DNA from: Octopus bimaculoides
Lineage: Eukaryota
Length of the DNA stretch: 33,102 nt
Reading direction: 5' to 3'
Assembly (NCBI RefSeq): GCF_001194135.2
Contig: NC_068998.1
Coordinates: 42,967,303-43,000,404 of the forward strand
Part shown: positions 1-30,739 of the stretch, one piece after another
Position numbering within the stretch: position 1 is the stretch's first letter
Layout of the letters: each line of letters begins with the position of its first letter
Made by a program: the position numbers and the translations under genes
Notes under the pieces: model-generated
Database searches by the model: none
What the model saw: only the letters and a program-made list of their open reading frames with translations
What the model was told of the DNA's origin: nothing

Positions 1-38
1 TGCCACTACTTTACAGAAGAGGGCCATACCTTCAATTA

Positions 39-420
39 CTAAATACTGTCATGAGATCTTATATGACTAACAAGTCATGCCCTTGACAAACAGCCTCTAA
101 TGCAGATCTTTGAAATATTTATAAGCAGAAAAGTGTCTGGGATTGTAGTTAAGTCCTGTCTACAAAGTGCTCGTTTCAAGATAGATTGTTCAATTCTCTG
201 AGCTTCAAATACTTTACATCTATTGTAGGTCATTTGTTTCCAAACCGATCGATCTTGCGTCATCTGCTCCCAGTCTTCAACTTCCACATTAAGGGCCTTA
301 AGGTTGCTTTTGACAGCATCCCTAAAATATCTCTTAGGTTCATGTCTTGGACATTTACCACGCTGCAATTGCCCATAAAGCAACTGGTTTGGCAACCTGC
401 CATCCTGTGTTCTGTGTAAA
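39..420 (-). mobile_element. RTE-clade LINE, decayed 3' end of the ORF including a terminal C2H2-like zinc finger
   Basis: Minus strand reads HRTQDGRLPNQLLYGQLQRGKCPRHEPKRYFRDAVKSNLKALNVEVEDWEQMTQDRSVWKQ, matching the RTE C-terminal pattern RLPKQLLYGEL..G.R..G.P.KRYKD.LK..L......WE..A.DR..W. The frame continues past the TGA at 75-77 as LVSHIRSHDSI*. Confidence 0.85.
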
Positions 421-647
421 CGTGTGTGTGTGTGTGTGTGTGTTTATGTGTATATTTGTATGTGTGAGTATCAACTCTGAGCCCTTGGAAACCATTAGGC
501 GATTATGCCTAAACTAACATTCACCAGAGTTTTTACCAATCTGTTTTAATATGCTCAGAATAGACACTTTCAACAGTTTAATGTTAATATAACCAGCTTC
601 TCTTTCTCTCTCGGTACACACACACACACACACACACACCTATATAT
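421..647. repeat. (TG)n and (CA)n microsatellites
   Basis: (tg)n at about 423-445 and (ca)n at about 616-639, directly visible. Confidence 0.9.
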
Positions 648-1399
648 NNNNNNNNNNNNNNNNNNNNNNNNNNNNNNNNNNNNNNNNNNNNNNNNNNNNN
701 NNNNNNNNNNNNNNNNNNNNNNNNNNNNNNNNNNNNNNNNNNNNNNNNNNNNNNNNNNNNNNNNNNNNNNNNNNNNNNNNNNNNNNNNNNNNNNNNNNNN
801 NNNNNNNNNNNNNNNNNNNNNNNNNNNNNNNNNNNNNNNNNNNNNNNNNNNNNNNNNNNNNNNNNNNNNNNNNNNNNNNNNNNNNNNNNNNNNNNNNNNN
901 NNNNNNNNNNNNNNNNNNNNNNNNNNNNNNNNNNNNNNNNNNNNNNNNNNNNNNNNNNNNNNNNNNNNNNNNNNNNNNNNNNNNNNNNNNNNNNNNNNNN
1001 NNNNNNNNNNNNNNNNNNNNNNNNNNNNNNNNNNNNNNNNNNNNNNNNNNNNNNNNNNNNNNNNNNNNNNNNNNNNNNNNNNNNNNNNNNNNNNNNNNNN
1101 NNNNNNNNNNNNNNNNNNNNNNNNNNNNNNNNNNNNNNNNNNNNNNNNNNNNNNNNNNNNNNNNNNNNNNNNNNNNNNNNNNNNNNNNNNNNNNNNNNNN
1201 NNNNNNNNNNNNNNNNNNNNNNNNNNNNNNNNNNNNNNNNNNNNNNNNNNNNNNNNNNNNNNNNNNNNNNNNNNNNNNNNNNNNNNNNNNNNNNNNNNNN
1301 NNNNNNNNNNNNNNNNNNNNNNNNNNNNNNNNNNNNNNNNNNNNNNNNNNNNNNNNNNNNNNNNNNNNNNNNNNNNNNNNNNNNNNNNNNNNNNNNNNN
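648..1399. other. Assembly gap (N run), first of 10
   Basis: Other N runs: 8564-8995, 11712-11838, 15115-15455, 17501-17762, 18670-18823, 25298-26288, 27012-27695, 28754-29642, 31045-31054. Confidence 0.99.
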
Positions 1400-1877: not shown

Positions 1878-2094
1878 CTTTTCTTCTCCATGCACAAGGC
1901 CCAAAATTTTGGGGGAGTGGGGGCTCAGTCGATTAGATCGATGCCAGTATGCAACCGGTACTGAATTCATCGAAGTTGAAAGGATGAAAAGCAAAGTCGA
2001 CCTTGATGGAATTTGAACTCAGATCTTAAAGACAGACGAAATACTGCTAAGCATTTCACCCGGCGTGCTAATGTTTCTGCCAGCTCGCCACCTA
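1878..2094 (-). mobile_element. SINE family B (tRNA-derived), full length, with 17-bp TSD
   Basis: Minus strand has an A-box-like tggcagaaac and a B-box-like gagttcaaattcc, then gtcgactttgcttttcatcctttc. Flanked by gttactctg(a/g)ttatatt at 1861-1877 and 2095-2111. Confidence 0.92.
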
Positions 2095-4045: not shown

Positions 4046-4250
4046 TGTGGCAAGGTGTCAGAAACGTTAGCACGCCGGGCGTTACGTTCCGAGTTCAAAT
4101 TCCGCCTAGGTTGACTTTACCTTTCATCCTTTTGGAGTCGATAAATTAAGTACCAGTTACGTACTGGGGTCGATGTAATCGACTTAATCCCTTTGTCTGT
4201 CCTTGTTTGTCCCCACTATGTTTAGCCCCTTGTGGGCAATAAAGAAATAA
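4046..4250 (+). mobile_element. SINE family B copy with an internal deletion and an alternative (D-like) 3' tail
   Basis: cagaaacgttagcacgccgggc...gagttcaaattccgcc...ctttcatcctttt..gtcgataaattaagtaccag..ctggggtcgatgtaatcgact, followed by tccccactatgtttagccccttgtgggcaataaagaaata. Confidence 0.85.
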
Positions 4251-6120: not shown

Positions 6121-6524
6121 GAAATAAATAGATAGAAAGACAAGTAGATAATAGACAAATATATACCTCAACTCACAAACTCAAATCTTTGAGAGTTATC
6201 TTTTTCAGCTTTACATCTTTTTTTTCAAAAAAATTAATTGAAGAAAATAAATTTCAACTTCTGTCGATTTATCTGATATTATGTCAGTCTCAGCAAAGAT
6301 GCTTAAAACATAGAAATTTTAAAAAAGCACCAAAAAAAAACAAAACAAACAAACCAATGCTGCGATTGAAAATCCAATAAAATATGAGCTAAAGTATGTA
6401 CAAGCCATTTATTAAAACAGATATAAGCTAATAAAGTTTTTTAAATATCTTTTTTGTGTTATGTCGCCTTTCAACTTAAGTTATGTGTCTTGGAACCAGT
6501 AACTGTCATAAGTTGAGTTATGCC

Positions 6525-6732
6525 TGTATACATATGTGTGTGTGTATGCATGTGCATGAGCATATATAAAAATATATATTTGCACAGATATATATATATA
6601 TATGTGCAGATATATATATGTGCACACAATATATATATATACACATATATATATATACACACATATGTATACATATATATATAGATATGTATATAAACAC
6701 ACATATTTTTATATATATATATATAATATATA

Positions 6733-6768
<36 letters not shown>

Positions 6769-6836
6769 TGCATGTGTATATGAAACATGCAAAGTGTATT
6801 TGTGCATGTGTGTGTGTATATATATATATATATATA
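6525..6836. repeat. Compound (TA)n/(TG)n/(CA)n microsatellite
   Basis: Alternating purine-pyrimidine array; the source of the I/Y/C/V/H/T ORFs. Confidence 0.95.
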
Positions 6837-7412
6837 CAGGGTGCTATGGGTAAATTGTCACCATTCTATACTACTAGCATCATCCATACATACTGTTTGT
6901 TTTTGATTTTGTTGACTACACAGTATAGTTGGGCACTGTCTGTGAGAAAAACAGTACCATGTTCCAATTCACTCTATCAGAAATTTGGAAATGACATATT
7001 GAAGAGCTTGGCATTCAGGCCGGAAGCTCCAATACAAACATTTCAGAGTGTTTAGGTGGCTATCTGAGGTCAGTGCAATCTGAGGTCAGTGCAATCTGAG
7101 GTCAGTGCAATCTGAGGACATGTACCAAGAGTGATAAAAATCAAGCATCCAGTCAGCATCATATTTGGAGTGATCACTAGCAATGGTGACATTATGCCTT
7201 CATTCATCTTCCCACATGGTCTCAGACACAACATGGTGGCCTACATCAAGTACTTGGAGGAGGTAGTGCTGCCCTGGATCAAGAAGATGGCTGCTGGAAA
7301 ACCCTATGTCTTGCAACAGGAGTCTGCACCATACCACACAAGCAGGAGAACCCAGTTCTGGGTGTTAGACAATTTCTACGACCACACCACCCCTAACATC
7401 TAGCCACCTAAC
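6837..7412 (+). mobile_element. IS630-Tc1-mariner transposon (maT/DD37D-like), internally deleted and 3'-truncated
   Basis: Starts TA-cagggtg, a typical Tc1/mariner TIR start. N-terminus MFQFTLSEIWK*HIEELGIQAGSSNTNISECLG begins at 6959. The catalytic part reads KHPVSIIFGVITSNGDIMPSFIF...YLEEVVLPWI...PYVLQQESAPYHTSRRTQ..DNFYDHTTPNI*PPN (the QQDSAP and WPPNSPD motifs, decayed). The third Asp is not present, so the DDxD spacing cannot be counted. Confidence 0.88.
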
Positions 7413-8239: not shown

Positions 8240-9189
8240 CAGTGTATATATATATTTGTATGTATACATACATATTTGTATGTCTATGTATATATATATA
8301 TGAATATAACGGAATCGCTGAATGAATATTTGTATATGTGTGTGTGTGTGTTTATATATATGTTTAAATGCATGCATGTATGTGTGCATGTGTTGTTATT
8401 CATATGTGCCCCTATTTCCTGGCAGTTTTACAGAAAATGTTGTGCATGTACAAACTGACATGCAAATATTGGCACCCTGACACAAAGACGAGGATGTAAC
8501 TATGAATACACATATATATATAATATATACATACATACACATATATATATATATATATATATANNNNNNNNNNNNNNNNNNNNNNNNNNNNNNNNNNNNN
8601 NNNNNNNNNNNNNNNNNNNNNNNNNNNNNNNNNNNNNNNNNNNNNNNNNNNNNNNNNNNNNNNNNNNNNNNNNNNNNNNNNNNNNNNNNNNNNNNNNNNN
8701 NNNNNNNNNNNNNNNNNNNNNNNNNNNNNNNNNNNNNNNNNNNNNNNNNNNNNNNNNNNNNNNNNNNNNNNNNNNNNNNNNNNNNNNNNNNNNNNNNNNN
8801 NNNNNNNNNNNNNNNNNNNNNNNNNNNNNNNNNNNNNNNNNNNNNNNNNNNNNNNNNNNNNNNNNNNNNNNNNNNNNNNNNNNNNNNNNNNNNNNNNNNN
8901 NNNNNNNNNNNNNNNNNNNNNNNNNNNNNNNNNNNNNNNNNNNNNNNNNNNNNNNNNNNNNNNNNNNNNNNNNNNNNNNNNNNNNNNNNNNNNNNTATAT
9001 GTATGTATATATATATATATATGTATGTATGTATATATATATATGTATGTATGTATATATATATATGTATGTATGTATATATATATGTATGTATGTATGT
9101 ATATGTATGTATATATATGTATGTATTTATGTATATATATGTATGTATGTATATATATGTATGTATTTATGTATATATATGTATGTATG

Positions 9190-12780: not shown

Positions 12781-13181
12781 AGGAGTGGCTGTGTGGTAAG
12801 TAGCTTGCTTACAAACCACATGGTTCTGGGTTCAGTCCCACTGCGTGGCACCTTGGGCAAGTGTCTTCTACTATAGCCTCGGGTCGACCAAAGCATTGTG
12901 AGTGGATTTGATAGACGGAAACTGAAAGAAGCCCGTCGTGTATATATATATGTATGTATGTGTGTGTGTGTGTATATGTGTGTCTGTGTTTGTCCCCCAG
13001 CATCGCTTATTGCTTGACAACCGATGCTGGTGTGTTAATGTCCTCGTAACGTAGTCGTTTGGCAAAAGAGAACAATAGAATAAGTACTAGGCTTACAAAG
13101 AATAAGTCCTGGGGTCGATTTGCTCGACTAAAGGCTGTGCTCCAGCATGGCCACAATCAAATGAGTGAAACAAGTAAAAGA
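12781..13181 (+). mobile_element. SINE family C (tRNA-derived CORE-type), full length, with an internal microsatellite
   Basis: A box tggctgtgtgg; B box ggttcagtccc; ggcaccttgggcaagtgtctt matches the CORE motif (MIR: gaccttgggcaagt). Internal (TA/TG)n at about 12940-12990. 3' end is gaaacaagtaaaaga. Confidence 0.9.
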
Positions 13182-13435: not shown

Positions 13436-13630
13436 AAGGTGGTGAGCTGGTAGATTCGTTAGCACGCCAGGCAAAATGTTCAGCGCTATTTTGTCTGAAG
13501 CTACGTTCTGAGTTCAAATTCTGCCGCGGTCAACTTTGCCTTTCATCCTTTTGGGGGTCGTTGAAATAAGTACCAATTATGCACTGGGCTCGATATAATC
13601 AGCTAGTCCCCCCCCACTTCCCCCCCAAAT
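13436..13630 (+). mobile_element. SINE family B
   Basis: ggtgagctggtagattcgttagcacgcc...gagttcaaattc...gcctttcatcc...taagtacca. Confidence 0.88.
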
Positions 13631-13823
13631 TAAAACAACTGACAAGCAAATCTGTGGTATTGAGCAGAATATTTGCTGTAGCCCATCTTTTATACCAAGA
13701 CAAAACAATGTGCATGATAACACTTCCAATCAGTTAAGTTAAGAAGCCATGAGGGCCACTGCCTGGTACTGCATCAGGGAAATTATTATTATTATTAACA
13801 TTATTATTATTATTAATGTGATA

Positions 13824-14020
13824 AAGGCGGTGAGTGGGCAAAATGCTTCGCGGTATTTTGTCTGTCTTTATGTTCTGAGTTCAAATTACTCTGAGGTCGA
13901 CTTTACTTTTCATCCTTTCAGGGTCGATAAAGTAAGTACCAGTTTTGTCCTGGGGTTGATATAATCGACTGGGCCCCCTCCCCAAAAATTTCGGGCTTTG
14001 TGCCGAAAGTAGAAAAGAAA
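13824..14020 (+). mobile_element. SINE family B with a deletion through the A-box region
   Basis: ggcggtgag|tgggcaaaatgc lacks about 21 bp (ctggcagaatcgttagcacgc) present in the other copies. The rest is intact. Confidence 0.85.
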
Positions 14021-14220
14021 TGTTACCATGCCAGACAAAATACTTGGCGGCATTTCATCTGTGCTTATGTTCTGAGTTTGAATTCTGCTGAGATCGACTT
14101 AACCTTTCATCCTTTCAGGGTCGATGAAATAAGTACCAGTTATGCACTGGGGTTGATGTAATCGACTAGCTCTCTCCCCCAGAATGTCAGGCCTTTTGCC
14201 TTGAGTAGATAGGGTTATTA
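14021..14220 (+). mobile_element. SINE family B, 5'-eroded
   Basis: gttctgagtttgaattc...cctttcatcctttcagggtcgatgaaataagtaccag...ctggggttgatgtaatcgact. Confidence 0.85.
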
Positions 14221-14809: not shown

Positions 14810-15494
14810 TATCAGCTTTAGTTCTTAACAAATCAAACAGAGGAGTTGATGTTATTATTTAAAGGAAGAATAATGAAACCCTTACCCTTTTTTTTTTATT
14901 ATTGTGCTTTTGGGTTATTTTTTTTTTGTTGTTGCCCAAATTTGCGTTTTGTTTTATTAGTGTTGTTTCTGCTTCTGTTTATGTTGTGTTTTATTGTTTT
15001 TTTTTTTAGTTCAACCACATCACGGGCCGTTCTTATTTTTTTAATTGCCAAAGAGGCATGTTGTGTACGAGCATTTGTATGTGTGTGTGTGTGTGAGTGT
15101 GTGTGCATGTGTGTNNNNNNNNNNNNNNNNNNNNNNNNNNNNNNNNNNNNNNNNNNNNNNNNNNNNNNNNNNNNNNNNNNNNNNNNNNNNNNNNNNNNNN
15201 NNNNNNNNNNNNNNNNNNNNNNNNNNNNNNNNNNNNNNNNNNNNNNNNNNNNNNNNNNNNNNNNNNNNNNNNNNNNNNNNNNNNNNNNNNNNNNNNNNNN
15301 NNNNNNNNNNNNNNNNNNNNNNNNNNNNNNNNNNNNNNNNNNNNNNNNNNNNNNNNNNNNNNNNNNNNNNNNNNNNNNNNNNNNNNNNNNNNNNNNNNNN
15401 NNNNNNNNNNNNNNNNNNNNNNNNNNNNNNNNNNNNNNNNNNNNNNNNNNNNNNNACTTCACCCTGTATCTACTAAACAAACACAGTGATTTGT

Positions 15495-17806: not shown

Positions 17807-17956
17807 ATGGGCTTCTTTCAGTTTCTGTCTACCAAATCTACACACAAGGCTTTGGTCAGCCTGAAGCTATAGTAGAAGACACTGGCCCAAGTTGTCACAC
17901 AGTGGGACTGAACCCAGAACCTTGTGGTTGGTAAGCAAGCTACTTACCACACGACT
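17803..17956 (-). mobile_element. SINE family C, 5' half
   Basis: gtagaagacactggcccaagt...gggactgaacccagaacc...aagcaagctacttaccacac is the reverse complement of the 12781 head. It ends in (TA)n and a gap. Confidence 0.88.
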
Positions 17957-18004
17957 ACACCAAATCATGTTTGTAGATATGCATAAAACATTTACTCAAG
18001 TACA

Positions 18005-18063
18005 AACATGTGAATAAATAAGTATTACATTTGATATGGAAACCCAAATGCTAAAAGGTTTAT
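18005..18063 (+). mobile_element. Right-end fragment of the piggyBac-like MITE
   Basis: atgtgaataaataagtattacatttga...aaatgctaaaaggttta matches 5006-5062. Confidence 0.6.
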
Positions 18064-19060
18064 TCAAATATTATATCCAGGTTTGTCTAATATGACATAG
18101 TAATTTTAAGAGAGTAAAGTGTAATTCGATGCAGAAAATATAGCTGATTGCTATTTCTAACAGGTCAAAGGACAATACAGAAGATCTACAGTTGAGTGGT
18201 GTAAGCCCTAGTCTCTCAACTAAGTGTAGATAGCTTATAAACATATCTACAGAATGAGGTGATGATCTGACAATAACTAAGTGAGATCACTCATATAATG
18301 CACTACACAGCAGATTGTTATTTGTCAGGCTTACTGACATACGATCTTGTGATAAACATTGTTTACTATGGGTTCAGATTAAAACTTGAATTAACAGGAG
18401 TGACTTACTGCTTCAACCCAAGCTAATTTTTATAGTAAAGCCATAAGAGTTTTCATACACGAAAACATAATAATTTTATGTGCGTGTGAAACTTAGCAGT
18501 CTTAGAAAAAAGATATATATATATATATATATATAATTTTTTTTTCGTGTGTATATAATGTTAATGGCAGACATCTCTCTGAATAAGTTATGAATATAAA
18601 TTCTTCTATGAATCCCAGAAGAATTCTAAAATAGGTAGGTTAGTGGTAATGCATTTAATATATATATATNNNNNNNNNNNNNNNNNNNNNNNNNNNNNNN
18701 NNNNNNNNNNNNNNNNNNNNNNNNNNNNNNNNNNNNNNNNNNNNNNNNNNNNNNNNNNNNNNNNNNNNNNNNNNNNNNNNNNNNNNNNNNNNNNNNNNNN
18801 NNNNNNNNNNNNNNNNNNNNNNNATATATATAGCTGCAAGAATGTCCGGGGAAAAATATCCAGGTATGTCTGCTACATGAAAAATTAATGTTTGTGTAGT
18901 GTGTGTGTGTGTGTGTGTAAATGTATGTCTCACATCAGCAAGCAGAAAAAATATAACTACTTCACTCTGTGAAGACTCAGAGAATGAAAAGCCACTCTTC
19001 CAGAACTGACGTTTGTACTTCCAGGAAAAATTAGAATATGATTTAAATGATTAAATACCA

Positions 19061-22217: not shown

Positions 22218-22897
22218 GAAATTAATAAAAAAAAAAGCTAATGTAATCAACAATCATTAACTTTACCTAATTACTTTTGTCACCTTTTCTATAGTAATTT
22301 ATTAATTCATAAAACCTTTTGAAACTAAAAGAAAATAGAGTAATTTACCAAAAGGTCAAAAGGTTACTTTTACCAAAAAGAAGAGAAAAACAAAAAGTCT
22401 CTTGTTATATTGTTCAAAAGTTTCTGTCAAGGCAAGGAGGTAAATGTTATGTCTTTATGTTCCATTTGTCTTAATTTTTCCTTGTCTTTTTACATTTTTC
22501 ATGAAATTATCAGATGCTGTATTTTTTTTTTTAATTGATTTCAAAAGTTTGCCTTAAAAACCGGGTTGCTTTCAACTAAAATGCTTTACAAAATAATAAA
22601 CACTAATGAAAGCCTATCACAACCACATTATGTGTGTGATCAGACGATAGCATTACATTGCTATGTCTGTGATTTGTCTTCTTTCTATATCTGATGTAAA
22701 AGACAAGCAGTTTCTATAACAAATCACTCATTCTTGCTCCCCTGAGCAAACCAGACAGCCAGTTTGTCTGTGGTTTCTATGTCTGTAAAAGATAGCAACC
22801 AAATCTTCTTCAAACCACATGCCACAAATTAAAAAAGAAAGAAGAAAAACAAGTGGACAATAGAAAATGTAGTCTTCAATATGTAAATAGATGAAAA

Positions 22898-23500
22898 TGG
22901 TAAACTGGCAGAATCATTAACATGCTGAGCAAAATACTTAGCATTATTTCATCTGTAGTAAAGTTTGTTTGCTAACATAACATGGCAGTCCTGGTTTAGG
23001 ACTAATGTTGCTGTAATTTAGCCCCAGGAGACATCGTCTCCAGCTGGCTATACGACATGATCTGTGTCCTTATATTTTCGAACAAGTGAATCTAGCACCC
23101 CCACTCAGCTCAAAACAATATCTGTGTATCACGATTTCTGGGTTATTTTTCTTCATCAGCACAGAATAATTATTCGGTTAGAGGTGGCGCTGCCAAATCT
23201 CTGTTCGAAATATATAGTTTTCAAAGTGACAACTAGTCACTGATCTATAAATTGGAAAATTACTATTGTTAAATCTCACAATGAGAGATATTCAGCAACA
23301 GTACTTTGGAGTAAAGATTGTCCTAAACCAAGACTGCCATGTTATATTGGCAAACAATCTTTACTACAAAGTACTGTTACTGAATATCTCTCGTTGTGAG
23401 ATTTAAAAATAGTAAATTTCTAATTATTTCATCTGTCTTAATATTTCGAGTTCAAATTCCATCGAAGCTGACTTTGCCTTTCATCCTTTCAGGGTTGATA
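22898..23500 (+). mobile_element. SINE family B split by a 466-bp insertion
   Basis: Head gtaaactggcagaatcattaacatgc...attatttcatctgt (to 22956) resumes at 23423 as attatttcatctgtcttaatatttcgagttcaaattcc...gcctttcatcctttcagggttgata. Confidence 0.85.
22957..23422. mobile_element. Fold-back insertion with nested inverted repeats and a 14-bp TSD; class unknown
   Basis: 22954-23002 is inverted at 23320-23368 (45/49 identical). Hairpin arms 23255-23321 and 23354-23420 (62/67). TSD attatttcatctgt at 22943-22956 and 23423-23436. Confidence 0.8.
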
Positions 23501-23504
23501 TTTT

Positions 23505-24216
23505 ACGTATTACCATGGTAATGTGGTGATGCACCATCTTGCCGAAAATAAAACTCCACATCTTCAAAGACTTCTTCAATGCTTGGCATAATACATTGTC
23601 ACAAGTTAAAGAAAATGGAACCAGGTACAATACCATCAAACAAGAATGGCCCAAGTAATCCTTATGATGATAAACCACTCTGCATTGTAACTCCTTGTTA
23701 TTAAGAGGATGTTCTTCTGTAAAATGCAGATTCTCAGGTACTCAGTAGGTTCAAGTATCTTGGTTAATTGAGCATTTTATGTTAAATGTAGTCTCATCAC
23801 ACCAAACAATCTTTGTTGAAAAGTGTAATTATTCCAAAAAATCTTGCCAAGTACCAATTGCAAAACTCTGCCCTTAGGTCAAGGACATCTTCATTGAAGG
23901 CATGGATCTTTCTTGGAATTCAGCATTTCAAAGTGCAATGGACACTCAAAATTATTATTTCGGTCTCAAAACCTGCTTTCTGTGCAGATTTTCTTAAACA
24001 TTTTTCTAGTACACTTTCTTGCTGTGTGGGTCTTATCAATGCCTGCAGTCTTCTTGAATGTTTCTTGTGGACAGGACATTCTGAACAATTCCACCTGCAT
24101 CAATCTTATCTCTGATTCGAGTGATGGTAAATCACATAGGTATATTTCTTTGACACTCTCTCTCCACCACTAAATTTTCATTGCATCACAACTCCATTTT
24201 CCTTTGTTGAAAGCTC
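23505..24216 (-). mobile_element. Decayed Tc1/mariner-superfamily transposase (DUF4817/HTH-type lineage)
   Basis: Minus strand, with stops and frameshifts: TITRIRDKIDAGGIVQNV; IHAFNEDVLDLRAEFCNWYLA; TKIVWCDETTF (first Asp); GVT...GLSS*GLLGPFLFDG; VEFYFRQDGASPHYH (second Asp). The third acidic residue and the TIRs are not seen. Confidence 0.88.
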
Positions 24217-24927: not shown

Positions 24928-26470
24928 TATATGTATGTATACATACATACATACATACATACATATGTAATCATGTATATATTTGTATACATAAATGCAT
25001 ACACATACATGTGTGTACATATATAAATATACATATGTGTGGTATACTTCTGTGGTATATGTATATGTGTGTGCAGGTGTGTATATATATTTATGTATAT
25101 ATATATGTGTGTATATATATACATATATGTATATATATACATATATATGCAAATATACATATATGTATATATATATACATATATATGCAAATATACATAT
25201 ATGTATATATATACATATATATGCAAATATACATATATGTATATATATACATATATATGCAAATATACATATATGTAAATATATACATATATATGCANNN
25301 NNNNNNNNNNNNNNNNNNNNNNNNNNNNNNNNNNNNNNNNNNNNNNNNNNNNNNNNNNNNNNNNNNNNNNNNNNNNNNNNNNNNNNNNNNNNNNNNNNNN
25401 NNNNNNNNNNNNNNNNNNNNNNNNNNNNNNNNNNNNNNNNNNNNNNNNNNNNNNNNNNNNNNNNNNNNNNNNNNNNNNNNNNNNNNNNNNNNNNNNNNNN
25501 NNNNNNNNNNNNNNNNNNNNNNNNNNNNNNNNNNNNNNNNNNNNNNNNNNNNNNNNNNNNNNNNNNNNNNNNNNNNNNNNNNNNNNNNNNNNNNNNNNNN
25601 NNNNNNNNNNNNNNNNNNNNNNNNNNNNNNNNNNNNNNNNNNNNNNNNNNNNNNNNNNNNNNNNNNNNNNNNNNNNNNNNNNNNNNNNNNNNNNNNNNNN
25701 NNNNNNNNNNNNNNNNNNNNNNNNNNNNNNNNNNNNNNNNNNNNNNNNNNNNNNNNNNNNNNNNNNNNNNNNNNNNNNNNNNNNNNNNNNNNNNNNNNNN
25801 NNNNNNNNNNNNNNNNNNNNNNNNNNNNNNNNNNNNNNNNNNNNNNNNNNNNNNNNNNNNNNNNNNNNNNNNNNNNNNNNNNNNNNNNNNNNNNNNNNNN
25901 NNNNNNNNNNNNNNNNNNNNNNNNNNNNNNNNNNNNNNNNNNNNNNNNNNNNNNNNNNNNNNNNNNNNNNNNNNNNNNNNNNNNNNNNNNNNNNNNNNNN
26001 NNNNNNNNNNNNNNNNNNNNNNNNNNNNNNNNNNNNNNNNNNNNNNNNNNNNNNNNNNNNNNNNNNNNNNNNNNNNNNNNNNNNNNNNNNNNNNNNNNNN
26101 NNNNNNNNNNNNNNNNNNNNNNNNNNNNNNNNNNNNNNNNNNNNNNNNNNNNNNNNNNNNNNNNNNNNNNNNNNNNNNNNNNNNNNNNNNNNNNNNNNNN
26201 NNNNNNNNNNNNNNNNNNNNNNNNNNNNNNNNNNNNNNNNNNNNNNNNNNNNNNNNNNNNNNNNNNNNNNNNNNNNNNNNNNNNNNNNATATATATGTGT
26301 GTGTGTATGTGTGTATATGTATATATATATATGTGTGTGTGTATGTGTGTATATGTATATATATATATGTGTGCGTGTATGTGTGTATATGTATATATAT
26401 ATATGTGTGCGTATATATATATATGTATATATAAATATGTGTGTGCGTATATATATATATATGATTATTT
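24928..26470. repeat. Compound TA-rich micro/minisatellite (36-bp units) spanning a 991-bp gap
   Basis: gcaaatatacatatatgtatatatatacatatatat repeats start at 25149, 25187, 25223, 25259 and 25295. A different unit of about 36 bp follows the gap. Confidence 0.92.
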
Positions 26471-27011: not shown

Positions 27012-27695
27012 NNNNNNNNNNNNNNNNNNNNNNNNNNNNNNNNNNNNNNNNNNNNNNNNNNNNNNNNNNNNNNNNNNNNNNNNNNNNNNNNNNNNNNNNN
27101 NNNNNNNNNNNNNNNNNNNNNNNNNNNNNNNNNNNNNNNNNNNNNNNNNNNNNNNNNNNNNNNNNNNNNNNNNNNNNNNNNNNNNNNNNNNNNNNNNNNN
27201 NNNNNNNNNNNNNNNNNNNNNNNNNNNNNNNNNNNNNNNNNNNNNNNNNNNNNNNNNNNNNNNNNNNNNNNNNNNNNNNNNNNNNNNNNNNNNNNNNNNN
27301 NNNNNNNNNNNNNNNNNNNNNNNNNNNNNNNNNNNNNNNNNNNNNNNNNNNNNNNNNNNNNNNNNNNNNNNNNNNNNNNNNNNNNNNNNNNNNNNNNNNN
27401 NNNNNNNNNNNNNNNNNNNNNNNNNNNNNNNNNNNNNNNNNNNNNNNNNNNNNNNNNNNNNNNNNNNNNNNNNNNNNNNNNNNNNNNNNNNNNNNNNNNN
27501 NNNNNNNNNNNNNNNNNNNNNNNNNNNNNNNNNNNNNNNNNNNNNNNNNNNNNNNNNNNNNNNNNNNNNNNNNNNNNNNNNNNNNNNNNNNNNNNNNNNN
27601 NNNNNNNNNNNNNNNNNNNNNNNNNNNNNNNNNNNNNNNNNNNNNNNNNNNNNNNNNNNNNNNNNNNNNNNNNNNNNNNNNNNNNNNNNNNNNNN

Positions 27696-28500: not shown

Positions 28501-29644
28501 CATTCCGTTTGCTCTTTTACCGTTTCCTTTCACTAAAAGAACTCCATGCAAAGGAATAAAAAAATATGAATATTGTTAAATTTAATGTCGTTATAAATTG
28601 ATTCATTAAATTGCAGGTATAATTTAATGAATCCTTTTTAATTTAATCCACCTCACTAACTGACATAATTGCCAAAATTGTTCTGAAGCCTAATCTACAT
28701 AAATTGACTGAAGGTGAATCTCTTCAACGAATTTGTATTTTAATTTGTATTTTNNNNNNNNNNNNNNNNNNNNNNNNNNNNNNNNNNNNNNNNNNNNNNN
28801 NNNNNNNNNNNNNNNNNNNNNNNNNNNNNNNNNNNNNNNNNNNNNNNNNNNNNNNNNNNNNNNNNNNNNNNNNNNNNNNNNNNNNNNNNNNNNNNNNNNN
28901 NNNNNNNNNNNNNNNNNNNNNNNNNNNNNNNNNNNNNNNNNNNNNNNNNNNNNNNNNNNNNNNNNNNNNNNNNNNNNNNNNNNNNNNNNNNNNNNNNNNN
29001 NNNNNNNNNNNNNNNNNNNNNNNNNNNNNNNNNNNNNNNNNNNNNNNNNNNNNNNNNNNNNNNNNNNNNNNNNNNNNNNNNNNNNNNNNNNNNNNNNNNN
29101 NNNNNNNNNNNNNNNNNNNNNNNNNNNNNNNNNNNNNNNNNNNNNNNNNNNNNNNNNNNNNNNNNNNNNNNNNNNNNNNNNNNNNNNNNNNNNNNNNNNN
29201 NNNNNNNNNNNNNNNNNNNNNNNNNNNNNNNNNNNNNNNNNNNNNNNNNNNNNNNNNNNNNNNNNNNNNNNNNNNNNNNNNNNNNNNNNNNNNNNNNNNN
29301 NNNNNNNNNNNNNNNNNNNNNNNNNNNNNNNNNNNNNNNNNNNNNNNNNNNNNNNNNNNNNNNNNNNNNNNNNNNNNNNNNNNNNNNNNNNNNNNNNNNN
29401 NNNNNNNNNNNNNNNNNNNNNNNNNNNNNNNNNNNNNNNNNNNNNNNNNNNNNNNNNNNNNNNNNNNNNNNNNNNNNNNNNNNNNNNNNNNNNNNNNNNN
29501 NNNNNNNNNNNNNNNNNNNNNNNNNNNNNNNNNNNNNNNNNNNNNNNNNNNNNNNNNNNNNNNNNNNNNNNNNNNNNNNNNNNNNNNNNNNNNNNNNNNN
29601 NNNNNNNNNNNNNNNNNNNNNNNNNNNNNNNNNNNNNNNNNNAT

Positions 29645-30215: not shown

Positions 30216-30378
30216 GACCGGCTTCTTGCAGTTTCTGTCTACTAAATCCGCTCACTAGACTTTGGTCGTTCTGAGGTTATAGTAGAAGTCACTTGCCCAA
30301 AGTGCCATGTAATTGAACTGAACCCAGAACCATGTGGTTGGGAAGCAAATTTCTTAGCACACAGCTATGCCTGCACCT
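30216..30378 (-). mobile_element. SINE family C, 5' half
   Basis: ggcttcttgcagtttctgtctactaaatcc...atagtagaagtcacttgcccaaagtgcc...gaacccagaaccatgtggttggga. Confidence 0.88.
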
Positions 30379-30739
30379 GGAGAAGTTTTAACAATAGATT
30401 TATGCTTCATAATCTAATGAGGATCTGAGCTAGAAGCAATATTGGATTTATAAAAGATGGTAATCAGGCTGCTTTAGAGATCAACTCTGAAGGTGTTATG
30501 GCGGAAGGGTTTAATGTGCAGCAATTCTCTCATATGGACTAACCTTATATGCAAGGAGGAAGGAGAGAAGGAAGAGGTAAAAGCTGAAGGAGGAGGAGGA
30601 GGAGGAGACAATGCTGACATCAGTGATGCCAATACAACCACTACTACTAATAATGTGTAATAACTTGAATTCCAAAGCCATATTCTTTACTTACCATCCA
30701 AGATTTTTCAAAATTAGACAACAGTACTTGTCATTTTAT

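What the first reader, a model, noticed from the sequence alone, without database searches (positions are those of the whole stretch)
22943..23436. Fold-back, circularly permuted 466-bp insertion with a 14-bp TSD inside a SINE
Call A a ~100-bp module (gaaa(a/t)ttactatt...ggtttaggac). The insert is: the 3' half of A (22954-23002), a unique middle, the 5' part of A (23255-23321), then a complete inverted A (23320-23420). The forward part is a 353-bp circular permutation (tgtagtaaag at 22954 recurs as tggagtaaag at 23307). The strand switch falls on a 5-nt microhomology (attgt), creating a 67-bp-arm hairpin with a 32-nt loop. The middle has small palindromes (ggagac-atc-gtctcc; gtgac-aacta-gtcac). 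A 14-bp TSD with no tail is longer than TA, TTAA or 8-9-bp DNA-transposon TSDs. Options are a tandem or circular template captured with a template switch, a twin-primed retro-insertion, or an undescribed hairpin-ended element. This is the most unusual structure in the window.
Basis: partly seen in the sequence, partly recalled or inferred. Interest (0 to 1): 0.7.

Follow-up and report, generated by a model that had tools for sequence, protein, structure and literature searches.

The report
Octopus retroelement copy with fold-back end
The odd 466-bp insert is real, but it is best read as one copy of a small non-coding octopus retroelement that was copied in from RNA with a strand switch at one end, a known kind of messy retrotransposition and not a new kind of mobile element.

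Summary
A 466-bp insert (22957-23422) sits inside an octopus SINE between two perfect 14-bp repeats. Five other SINE copies in the window carry that 14-mer once, uninterrupted. The insert is 1.03 turns of a 353-bp unit followed by a 101-bp inverted module A, forming a 72-bp-arm hairpin. All three junctions have 2-3 nt of microhomology, so the duplication is 8-14 bp. The arms differ by 8%, so this is not an assembly artefact.

New evidence: about 57 kb of other octopus DNA held one relative, in O. vulgaris. It is 254 bp, has its own perfect 14-bp duplication, starts at exactly the same element base, and stops before the fold-back region. One constant end with a variable other end is the signature of target-primed reverse transcription. 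It makes the window's left end the element's 3' end, with the sense strand on minus. Two small hairpins carry compensatory changes between the copies.

Best reading: a non-autonomous retroelement whose fold-back is a 5' inversion made at integration. Penelope-like elements typically produce a partial tandem plus an inverted copy plus a one-sided tail. LINE twin priming on a multimeric transcript is not excluded. No hammerhead ribozyme, terminal inverted repeats or ORF were found. It is a new member of a known kind, of modest interest.

The parts
22893..22956 (+). Left part of the host SINE (tRNA-like head side). It ends with the first copy of the target duplication.
   Evidence: It aligns with five other SINE copies in the window.
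22943..22956 (.). Target-site duplication, copy 1 (ATTATTTCATCTGT). The last 3 nt (tgt) could equally come from module A, which is microhomology.
   Evidence: The 14-mer is present once in other SINE copies.
22957..23321 (-). Direct segment of the insert, 365 bp, or 1.03 turns of a 353-bp unit. It reads A(55-101), then the middle, then A(1-67). In the inferred minus sense, its left end (22957) is the constant 3' end of the element.
   Evidence: The 353-bp period is shown. The O. vulgaris relative R1 starts at exactly this base and is collinear up to about 23222.
22988..23002 (-). 5-bp stem-loop GTCCT-ggttt-AGGAC, about 32 nt from the inferred 3' end. It recurs in the inverted copy at 23320-23334.
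   Evidence: R1 has TCCC-gtaa-GGGA at the same place, where one T-A pair has become C-G, changed on both sides.
23003..23249 (-). Middle of the unit. It is non-coding and holds the palindromes 23027-23041 and 23226-23240, plus an imperfect inverted repeat of about 36-nt arms (about 23071-23108 against 23183-23216).
   Evidence: (no Pfam match). R1 keeps the 23027-23041 hairpin with a compensatory G-C to A-T change.
23250..23321 (-). Forward 5' part of module A, which is the left arm of the large hairpin.
   Evidence: 66/72 identical to the inverted copy. Hairpin fold.
23320..23422 (+). Inverted segment: a complete module A in the opposite orientation, plus 'ta'. It contains the 32-nt loop (23322-23353) and the right hairpin arm (23354-23425). 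It is read as the 5' inverted piece of the insertion. Its outer 54-56 nt run past the element's normal 3' end into the next unit, like the 'tail' of a Penelope-like element.
   Evidence: The comparison with Penelope-like elements comes from PMC3846280 and PMC8557442.
23423..23436 (.). Target-site duplication, copy 2. The first 3 nt (att) also continue the module A homology, which is microhomology.
23437..23507 (+). Right part of the host SINE (B-box-like ttcgagttcaaattcc and the conserved ctttcatcctttcagggt core).

Best explanation
The insert is one copy of a small (353-nt unit), non-coding, non-autonomous retroelement family found in octopus genomes. It entered a SINE by target-primed reverse transcription (TPRT).

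Orientation. The element's sense strand is the window's minus strand. Its constant 3' end is at 22957, and a conserved stem-loop lies about 32 nt inside that end.

Proposed steps:
1. The first cDNA strand was primed on the nicked target through 3 nt of microhomology.
2. It ran back through slightly more than one unit. The template therefore carried module A at both ends. It could have been a partial tandem (pseudo-LTR-like) transcript, a multimeric transcript, or less likely a circle.
3. The other target end primed a second cDNA on the template about 55 nt beyond the normal 3' end, again through 3 nt of microhomology.
4. That second cDNA copied module A in the opposite direction.
5. [quoted passage not shown] This produced the 72-bp-arm hairpin and an 8-14 bp target duplication.

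Which enzyme did this is not resolved. The combination of partial tandem, inverted copy at the 5' end and one-sided read-through tail is what Penelope-like element (PLE) machinery typically produces, and I favour it slightly. LINE twin priming on a multimeric transcript would give the same product.

Shown: the anatomy, the duplication, the empty site, the shared end with a second copy, and the absence of a ribozyme, TIRs or an ORF. Inferred: the RNA intermediate, the sense strand, the order of events and the enzyme.
For: (1) It is a real insertion with a duplicated target and an intact empty site in paralogous SINEs.

(2) There is microhomology at all three junctions: tgt, att and gt. That is the reported signature of 5'-inverted, twin-primed copies. 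The 14-bp duplication lies at the L1 peak of 14-16 bp (PMC2912911).

(3) A second family member, R1, lies in O. vulgaris at L003 14983-15236:
- nhmmer E = 2e-10.
- It has its own perfect 14-bp repeat, TAATCAATACTTTT. By my estimate the chance of this is about 2e-5.
- It starts at exactly the same element base as the window copy.
- It is collinear with the window copy only as far as about 23222. For the last 51 nt, 9 of 1000 shuffles reach the collinear score, against 337 of 1000 for an alignment to the window's right end.
One constant end and a variable, truncated other end is the pattern TPRT leaves.

(4) Two hairpins keep their pairing through changes on both sides between the two copies. 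This suggests selection on the structure of a single-stranded intermediate.

(5) The three A pieces differ from each other by the same amount, 66/72 and 45/49, both 92%. That is expected if they were identical at a single event.

(6) Known Penelope-like insertions show a partial tandem (pLTR), an adjacent inverted 5'-truncated copy that overlaps the direct one, a one-sided tail that continues the unit, 8-10 bp duplications or microhomology junctions, and non-autonomous derivatives (PMC3846280; PMC8557442).

(7) O. vulgaris has 30 recently active Penelope families and 13 L1-Tx1 families (PMC13282606).
Against: - Only one solid relative was found, so the claim of a constant 3' end rests on two copies.
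- No autonomous partner with a matching 3' end turned up in the sampled DNA.
- No hammerhead ribozyme is present, although canonical PLE pLTRs and metazoan retrozymes have one. Only Naiad/Chlamys-type PLEs lack it.
- The direct 'pLTR' overlap is only 13 nt, and the 54-56 nt tail is longer than the 30-40 nt reported.
- PLE duplications reported in Adineta vaga are 8-10 bp.
- For classical twin priming, the two cDNAs overlap by 67-72 nt on the template, which is large.
- R1 stops before the fold-back region, so it cannot show whether longer family members inherit the fold-back.
Confidence: 0.6

Rival explanations
1. The fold-back is inherited. On this reading the whole 466 bp is the standard full-length form of the family, a structured SINE-like element whose master copy already contains the inverted module A. 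This copy would then be an ordinary full-length insertion.
For: R1 ends before the fold-back region, so it does not exclude this. The unit and the hairpin are strongly structured. Compensatory changes show that structure matters in this family.
Against: The homology of the inverted A continues 3 nt into the target duplication. That is expected from primer annealing at integration and is otherwise a coincidence of roughly 3-5%. The hairpin arms differ by exactly as much as the other duplicated piece, 92% in both cases, which fits a single moment of origin. The right end has no promoter-like or tRNA-like head.
Confidence: 0.15
2. DNA-level capture. A staggered chromosome break was repaired by copying from a 353-bp tandem array or an extrachromosomal circle, with a microhomology-mediated template switch to the opposite strand (fold-back repair). 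No RNA or transposition machinery would be involved.
For: There is microhomology at all three junctions. The template is longer than one unit. Fold-back inversions with short spacers are known products of such repair (titles listed).
Against: A diverged relative in another species has its own 14-bp duplication and starts at exactly the same base. That points to a mobile family with a defined end, not a one-off repair patch. A clean 8-14 bp duplication is typical of endonuclease-staggered integration.
Confidence: 0.08
3. A hammerhead-type metazoan retrozyme. This would be a PLE-dependent tandem unit that self-cleaves, circularises and is copied from a circular RNA by rolling-circle reverse transcription.
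For: The unit is 353 nt, GC is about 37%, the duplication is longer than 4 bp and the copy is longer than one unit. All of this matches the published description: units of 150-450 bp, 350-390 bp in mussel and 330-353 bp in axolotl (PMC7229834; bioRxiv 2026.07.22.740005). Folded as a circle, the minus-sense unit is more stable than shuffles (z = -4.2).
Against: No hammerhead or other self-cleaving ribozyme was found on either strand, even at E <= 10. My own descriptor scan of the tandem unit also found none. The single CTGATGA has no helix II or GAAA partner.
Confidence: 0.07
4. A new kind of DNA element with a fixed 14-bp target duplication and a hairpin end.
For: Both known copies have exactly 14-bp perfect duplications. 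From my own knowledge, no described eukaryotic transposon superfamily makes 14-bp duplications.
Against: There are no terminal inverted repeats under any boundary choice between 8 and 14 bp. Only one end is shared between the two copies. Microhomology at the junctions is not expected from cut-and-paste ends. Fourteen bp is simply the mode for L1-type TPRT, and n = 2.
Confidence: 0.05
5. An assembly or library artefact, such as a chimeric fold-back read or a collapsed repeat.
For: The window is a gapped draft with 10 runs of N. Authors note that tandem/inverted PLE structures trouble short-read assemblies (PMC8557442).
Against: The arms are only 92% identical, whereas artefactual fold-backs are perfect. 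The nearest gaps are at 18670-18823 and 25298-26288. The insert has a clean duplication and an intact empty site in paralogous SINEs.
Confidence: 0.03

Closest known systems
Insertions of endonuclease-positive Penelope-like elements (Penelope/Poseidon, Neptune, Naiad) and their non-autonomous derivatives
   Same: Several features match: a copy longer than one unit (partial tandem, or pseudo-LTR); an inverted 5'-truncated copy lying directly against the 5' end and overlapping the direct copy; an extension on one side only that continues the unit's sequence; a short target duplication or microhomology junction; and 5' truncation in other copies. Non-coding cargo carried between pLTRs is also known (PMC3846280, PMC8557442). 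PLEs are active in octopus (PMC13282606).
   Different: No PLE reverse transcriptase or GIY-YIG gene, and no PLE 3' end with matching sequence, could be linked to this element. There is no hammerhead. The direct repeat is only 13 nt, the tail is 54-56 nt against the reported 30-40, and the duplication is up to 14 bp against the 8-10 reported in a rotifer.
5'-inverted LINE-1 insertions made by twin priming, and tailless retrocopies
   Same: The target duplication is at the 14-16 bp mode. There is microhomology at the 5' junction, the 3' junction and the inversion junction. The inverted piece lies at the 5' side (PMC2912911).
   Different: There is no poly(A) or other tail. The two segments overlap by 67-72 nt on the template instead of abutting. 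The template must contain module A twice. The nick sites do not resemble TT/AAAA.
Metazoan non-LTR retrozymes (tandem units with a type I hammerhead, expressed as circular RNA)
   Same: The unit size (353 nt), low GC, a duplication longer than 4 bp, the greater-than-unit copy and self-paired RNA all match (PMC7229834).
   Different: The defining hammerhead ribozyme is absent. No tandem array was seen.
DIRS-type retroelements (inverted terminal repeats plus an internal complementary region, circular intermediate)
   Same: Both show circular permutation together with inverted pieces of the same module.
   Different: DIRS elements make no target duplication and encode a tyrosine recombinase. This insert has a clear duplication and no ORF.

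Membership tests
Penelope-like element insertion (non-autonomous derivative) | Partial tandem: the direct copy is longer than one unit (pseudo-LTR) | tested here: met
   The direct part is 365 bp, or 353 + 12-13 bp. The repeat is very short, however.
Penelope-like element insertion (non-autonomous derivative) | An inverted 5'-truncated copy directly adjacent to the 5' end of the direct copy | tested here: met
   The inverted A at 23320-23422 abuts the direct part with a 2-nt overlap. The orientation is inferred from the end shared with R1.
Penelope-like element insertion (non-autonomous derivative) | A one-sided tail that continues the unit beyond the normal 3' end | tested here: inconclusive
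   The inverted copy runs 54-56 nt past the position where the direct copy and R1 end. The published tails are 30-40 nt. This rests on two copies only.
Penelope-like element insertion (non-autonomous derivative) | A 3' end or pLTR sequence shared with an autonomous PLE (RT plus GIY-YIG) of the same genome | not testable with these tools
   No eukaryotic genome or repeat library was available. No match was found in 57 kb of sampled octopus DNA.
Penelope-like element insertion (non-autonomous derivative) | A hammerhead ribozyme in the pLTR (canonical clades; absent in Naiad and Chlamys) | tested here: not met
   The Rfam scan at E <= 10 and my own motif scan found none.
Metazoan non-LTR retrozyme | A type I hammerhead ribozyme in every unit | tested here: not met
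Metazoan non-LTR retrozyme | A low-GC unit of 150-450 bp, repeated head to tail | tested here: inconclusive
   The unit is 353 bp with GC about 37%, but only 1.03 turns are present here and no array was seen.
LINE twin-primed (5'-inverted) retrocopy | A target duplication with microhomology at the 5', 3' and inversion junctions | tested here: met
   The duplication is up to 14 bp and the microhomologies are tgt, att and gt.
LINE twin-primed (5'-inverted) retrocopy | A poly(A) or LINE-type 3' tail, and inverted and direct segments that abut on the template | tested here: not met
   There is no tail at either end. The segments overlap by 67-72 nt.
tRNA-, 5S- or 7SL-derived SINE | A Pol III head related to a small RNA gene | tested here: not met
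   ARAGORN and Rfam found nothing in the insert. The box-like motifs I read by eye have the wrong spacing.
MITE / TIR DNA transposon (including Foldback elements) | Terminal inverted repeats at the very ends, and a superfamily-specific duplication of 2-11 bp | tested here: not met
   The ends AGTAAAG... and ...AATTTCTA are not inverted repeats under any boundary choice. The inverted repeat is internal and asymmetric.
Helitron / Helentron | No target duplication, insertion at an A/T site, and 5' TC with a 3' CTRR end and subterminal hairpin | tested here: not met
   A duplication is present and the termini do not match on either strand.
DIRS retroelement | No target duplication | tested here: not met
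   A perfect 14-bp duplication is present, with a verified empty site.

The most novel reading that the evidence does not exclude
The family could be a ribozyme-free counterpart of animal retrozymes. On this reading it is a structured, about 353-nt non-coding RNA of cephalopods that is copied from a tandem or circular template by Penelope-like (perhaps Naiad-type) machinery. Its 3' stem-loop would serve as the recognition signal, and it would integrate with a near-fixed stagger of about 14 bp.
Probability: 0.15. Interest if true: 0.55.

Novelty: new member of a known kind. Interest (0 to 1): 0.3.

Why it matters
Octopus genomes are about two-thirds repeats, and a large share is unclassified. 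Insertions that combine tandem and inverted pieces are routinely mis-annotated or mis-assembled. This locus is a clean, datable example with an intact duplication, a verifiable empty site and all junctions readable. It shows how such a composite arises in one integration event, and it gives a probe for a family that automatic pipelines probably label 'unknown' or 'unclassified SINE': the 353-nt unit, the constant 3' end and the conserved stem-loop. If the partner turns out to be a Penelope-like element, this would be a ribozyme-free non-autonomous PLE derivative in a mollusc. That bears on the open question of what PLE machinery recognises. If the partner is a LINE, it is just a tidy twin-priming case.

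Tried and rejected
- Other copies in the window: none.
- Protein-space search with the insert's longest frame: no hits.
- Exact look-up of two window ORFs: not on record.
- Exact DNA patterns from module A in metagenome contigs and prokaryotic genomes: none, as expected for animal DNA.
- The 17-mer shared by the two copies gave 59 bacterial and 14 viral hits. These are chance: I expect about 69 matches in 596 Gb, and none extends beyond 22 nt.
- Ribozymes, tRNA, snRNA and miRNA: only sub-threshold, generic hairpin matches (mir-559 scored 35.9 bits against a gathering score of 95).
- My own hammerhead descriptor on the tandem unit: nothing.
- Pfam on the insert's ORFs: nothing.
- Helitron, DIRS, MITE and Foldback readings were rejected on termini and the duplication.
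- R1's right end as a homologue of the window's right end was rejected by a shuffle test (337 of 1000 shuffles scored as well). Both right junctions do read ATTTCTAAT, and I leave that unexplained.
- A weak third relative, L003 6219-6353 on the minus strand, matching window 23197-23337 at E = 1e-4, was not relied on.
- Tandem organisation around R1: none.
- The supplement of the O. vulgaris repeat paper holds no sequence library.
- Sampling more octopus DNA was limited to three loci, because only three octopus proteins were returned.

Full report
**What the window is.** The 33-kb window is animal DNA from a gapped draft assembly. It has 10 runs of N totalling 4,642 nt, GC of 34% and a CpG observed/expected ratio of 0.38. 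It has no tRNA genes and no Rfam matches at gathering score. A mariner-like fragment at 7116-7400 has as its only protein hit an uncharacterised protein of Octopus bimaculoides. The window shares repeats at 80-90% identity with loci fetched from O. bimaculoides and O. vulgaris. It is therefore octopod DNA. The species was not proven.

- ATTATTTCATCTGT occurs at 22943-22956 and 23423-23436, 14/14 identical.
- With the 466 bp between the repeats removed, the joined flanks align across the junction to five other copies of the same SINE in the window.
- In four of those copies the 14-mer is present once and uninterrupted; the fifth is gapped across it. This serves as an internal empty-site test.
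- The nearest assembly gaps are more than 1.8 kb away.

**Anatomy of the insert**:

| Piece | Coordinates | Note |
|---|---|---|
| Module A, positions 55-101, forward | 22957-23002 | 45/49 identical to the inverted copy, counted from 22954 |
| Middle | 23003-23249 | 247 nt, non-coding |
| Module A, positions 1-67, forward | 23250-23321 | 66/72 identical to the inverted copy |
| Complete module A, inverted | from 23320 | followed by 'ta' |

- The forward part is 353 + 12-13 bp, so it is 1.03 turns of a 353-bp unit.
- The inverted A and the forward 5' part form a hairpin with 72-nt arms and a 32-nt loop (-62.4 kcal/mol as DNA, z = -19.6).

Two refinements matter for the mechanism.
- Module A homology continues 3 nt into each copy of the duplication: tgt on the left and att on the right. 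Both outer junctions therefore have microhomology, and the true duplication is 8-14 bp.
- The strand switch shares 2 exact nucleotides (gt) and sits at the base of a small stem-loop (GTCCT...AGGAC).

The three A pieces differ from one another by the same amount, 92% in both comparisons. This fits a single event followed by equal decay. It also rules out a chimeric-read artefact, which would give perfect arms.

**What it is not.**
- No hammerhead or other self-cleaving ribozyme, tRNA-like head or small-RNA gene was found, even at E <= 10. Only generic hairpin matches appeared, far below threshold.
- A hand-written hammerhead descriptor run on the tandem unit found nothing.
- The short ORFs have no Pfam match and no relatives among 5.8 billion proteins.
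- The ends (AGTAAAG... and ...AATTTCTA) are not inverted repeats under any boundary choice. MITE, Foldback and Helitron readings fail on this. DIRS fails because the insert has a duplication.

**A second copy changes the picture.** No eukaryotic genome collection was available, so I sampled octopus DNA through three annotated proteins: L001 and L002 from O. bimaculoides and L003 from O. vulgaris, about 57 kb of non-N sequence. A profile search found one clear relative, R1, at L003 14983-15236 (E = 2e-10).
- R1 is 254 bp and is flanked by its own perfect 14-bp repeat, TAATCAATACTTTT.
- For that particular 14-mer to recur within 600 nt by chance, I estimate a probability of about 2e-5.
- In ungapped register, R1's first base falls exactly on the first base of the window insert, and both copies begin AGT.
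- R1 is collinear with the window copy for about 200 nt at 67% identity.
- Its last 51 nt also fit the collinear continuation, ending opposite window position ~23222. Nine of 1000 shuffles score as well. For an alignment to the window's right end, 337 of 1000 do.

So two diverged copies, in different species and different flanks, share one end to the nucleotide and differ at the other. That is the pattern left by target-primed reverse transcription: a constant 3' end and variable 5' truncation. It makes the window's left end the element's 3' end, with the sense strand on minus.

Two small hairpins keep their pairing between the copies through changes on both sides:
- GTCCT/AGGAC in the window against TCCC/GGGA in R1.
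- GGAGAC/GTCTCC in the window against GGAAAC/GTTTCC in R1.

This hints at selection on a single-stranded intermediate. The first hairpin lies about 32 nt from the inferred 3' end, where stringent reverse transcriptases usually read their templates. That last point is inference from general knowledge.

**Mechanism.** In the minus sense, the window copy reads as an inverted module A (plus 'ta'), then A'(35-101), the middle and A'(1-47). This is a direct copy slightly longer than one unit, with an inverted partial copy against its 5' end. The outer 54-56 nt of that inverted copy run beyond the normal 3' end into what would be the next unit. The template must therefore have carried module A on both sides of the middle. 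It could have been a partial tandem, a multimer or a circle. Both target ends must have primed synthesis.

Two known processes give this product.
- **Penelope-like elements (PLEs).** Their ordinary insertions are described as partial tandems (pseudo-LTRs), with an adjacent inverted 5'-truncated copy that overlaps the direct one, a one-sided tail that continues the unit, and 8-10 bp duplications or microhomology junctions. Non-coding or host cargo mobilised between pLTRs is also reported (PMC3846280; PMC8557442). The Naiad and Chlamys clades lack hammerheads. O. vulgaris has 30 recently active Penelope families (PMC13282606).
- **LINE twin priming.** This gives 5'-inverted copies with microhomology at the 5', 3' and inversion junctions, and duplications that peak at 14-16 bp (PMC2912911). 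L1-Tx1, CR1, RTE and Dong-R4 LINEs are also active in octopus.

I favour the PLE-style route slightly, because it accounts for the greater-than-unit copy and the read-through tail without extra assumptions. The data cannot separate the two routes.

Metazoan retrozymes match on unit size, GC and duplication length (PMC7229834), and they are thought to be PLE derivatives (bioRxiv 2026.07.22.740005). The defining ribozyme is absent here, so the insert cannot be filed as a retrozyme.

**Rivals.**
- The fold-back could be inherited from a master copy, since R1 stops short of that region. The 3-nt continuation of homology into the duplication and the equal divergence of all duplicated pieces argue mildly for formation at integration.
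- DNA-repair capture of a tandem or circular fragment is hard to square with a second dispersed copy that has the same end and its own duplication.
- A transposase with a fixed 14-bp stagger is suggested only by two copies both showing 14 bp, and 14 bp is also the TPRT mode.
- An assembly artefact is unlikely, for the reasons given above.

**Limits.**
- The family is defined by two copies plus one weak third match.
- No autonomous partner was identified.
- The sense strand, the RNA intermediate and the order of events are inferred.
- A genome-wide census of copies would settle most of this in an afternoon.

**Verdict.** This is a real and nicely preserved composite insertion. It is explained by known variants of retrotransposition, and it belongs to a probably unannotated non-autonomous octopus retroelement family. 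It is a new member of a known kind, and its interest is modest.

Noticed in passing
L003 (O. vulgaris OX597835.1) 6258-7157: A near-perfect palindrome with 448-nt arms, 99% complementary and only 4 nt between the arms. Each arm contains a SINE copy. It is either a very young fold-back duplication or a long-read assembly artefact.
   Followed up: partly
L003 14983-15236, with repeats at 14969-14982 and 15237-15250: A 254-bp relative of the window insert, with its own perfect 14-bp target duplication. Both right junctions, here and in the window, read ATTTCTAAT, although the right ends are otherwise not alignable. This is unexplained.
   Followed up: yes
window 13440-14125; also 1977-2083 (minus strand) and 4087-4152: At least six copies of the same tRNA-related SINE lie in 33 kb. 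Three of them sit in a head-to-tail cluster within 700 bp.
   Followed up: partly
window 12812-13006, 17865-18014 and 30246-30425; L003 15589-15897; L001 18515-18622: A second short repeat family. Its spurious ORFs all read ...GLNPEPCG..., and it is often followed by a microsatellite or an assembly gap.
   Followed up: no
window 1-443 (minus strand): The 3' end of a LINE. It is 85-86% identical to copies in O. bimaculoides (next to an annotated RVT_1 gene, LOC106879754) and in O. vulgaris. It has no similarity to the insert, so it is not the insert's partner.
   Followed up: partly
window 7116-7400 (+) and about 23484-23741 (-): Decayed Tc1/mariner-type transposase remnants. The second lies immediately to the right of the host SINE and reads ...FRQDGASPHYH... 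Neither has a Pfam match above threshold.
   Followed up: partly
window 648-1399, 8564-8995, 15115-15455, 25298-26288, 27012-27695, 28754-29642 and four shorter runs: Ten assembly gaps. Most are bordered by TA/CA-rich microsatellites. The very low GC values in the composition profile are produced by these N runs.
   Followed up: yes
window about 23071-23108 against 23183-23216: The middle of the unit contains its own imperfect inverted repeat with about 36-nt arms. Folded as a circle, the minus-sense unit is more stable than shuffles (z = -4.2).
   Followed up: partly
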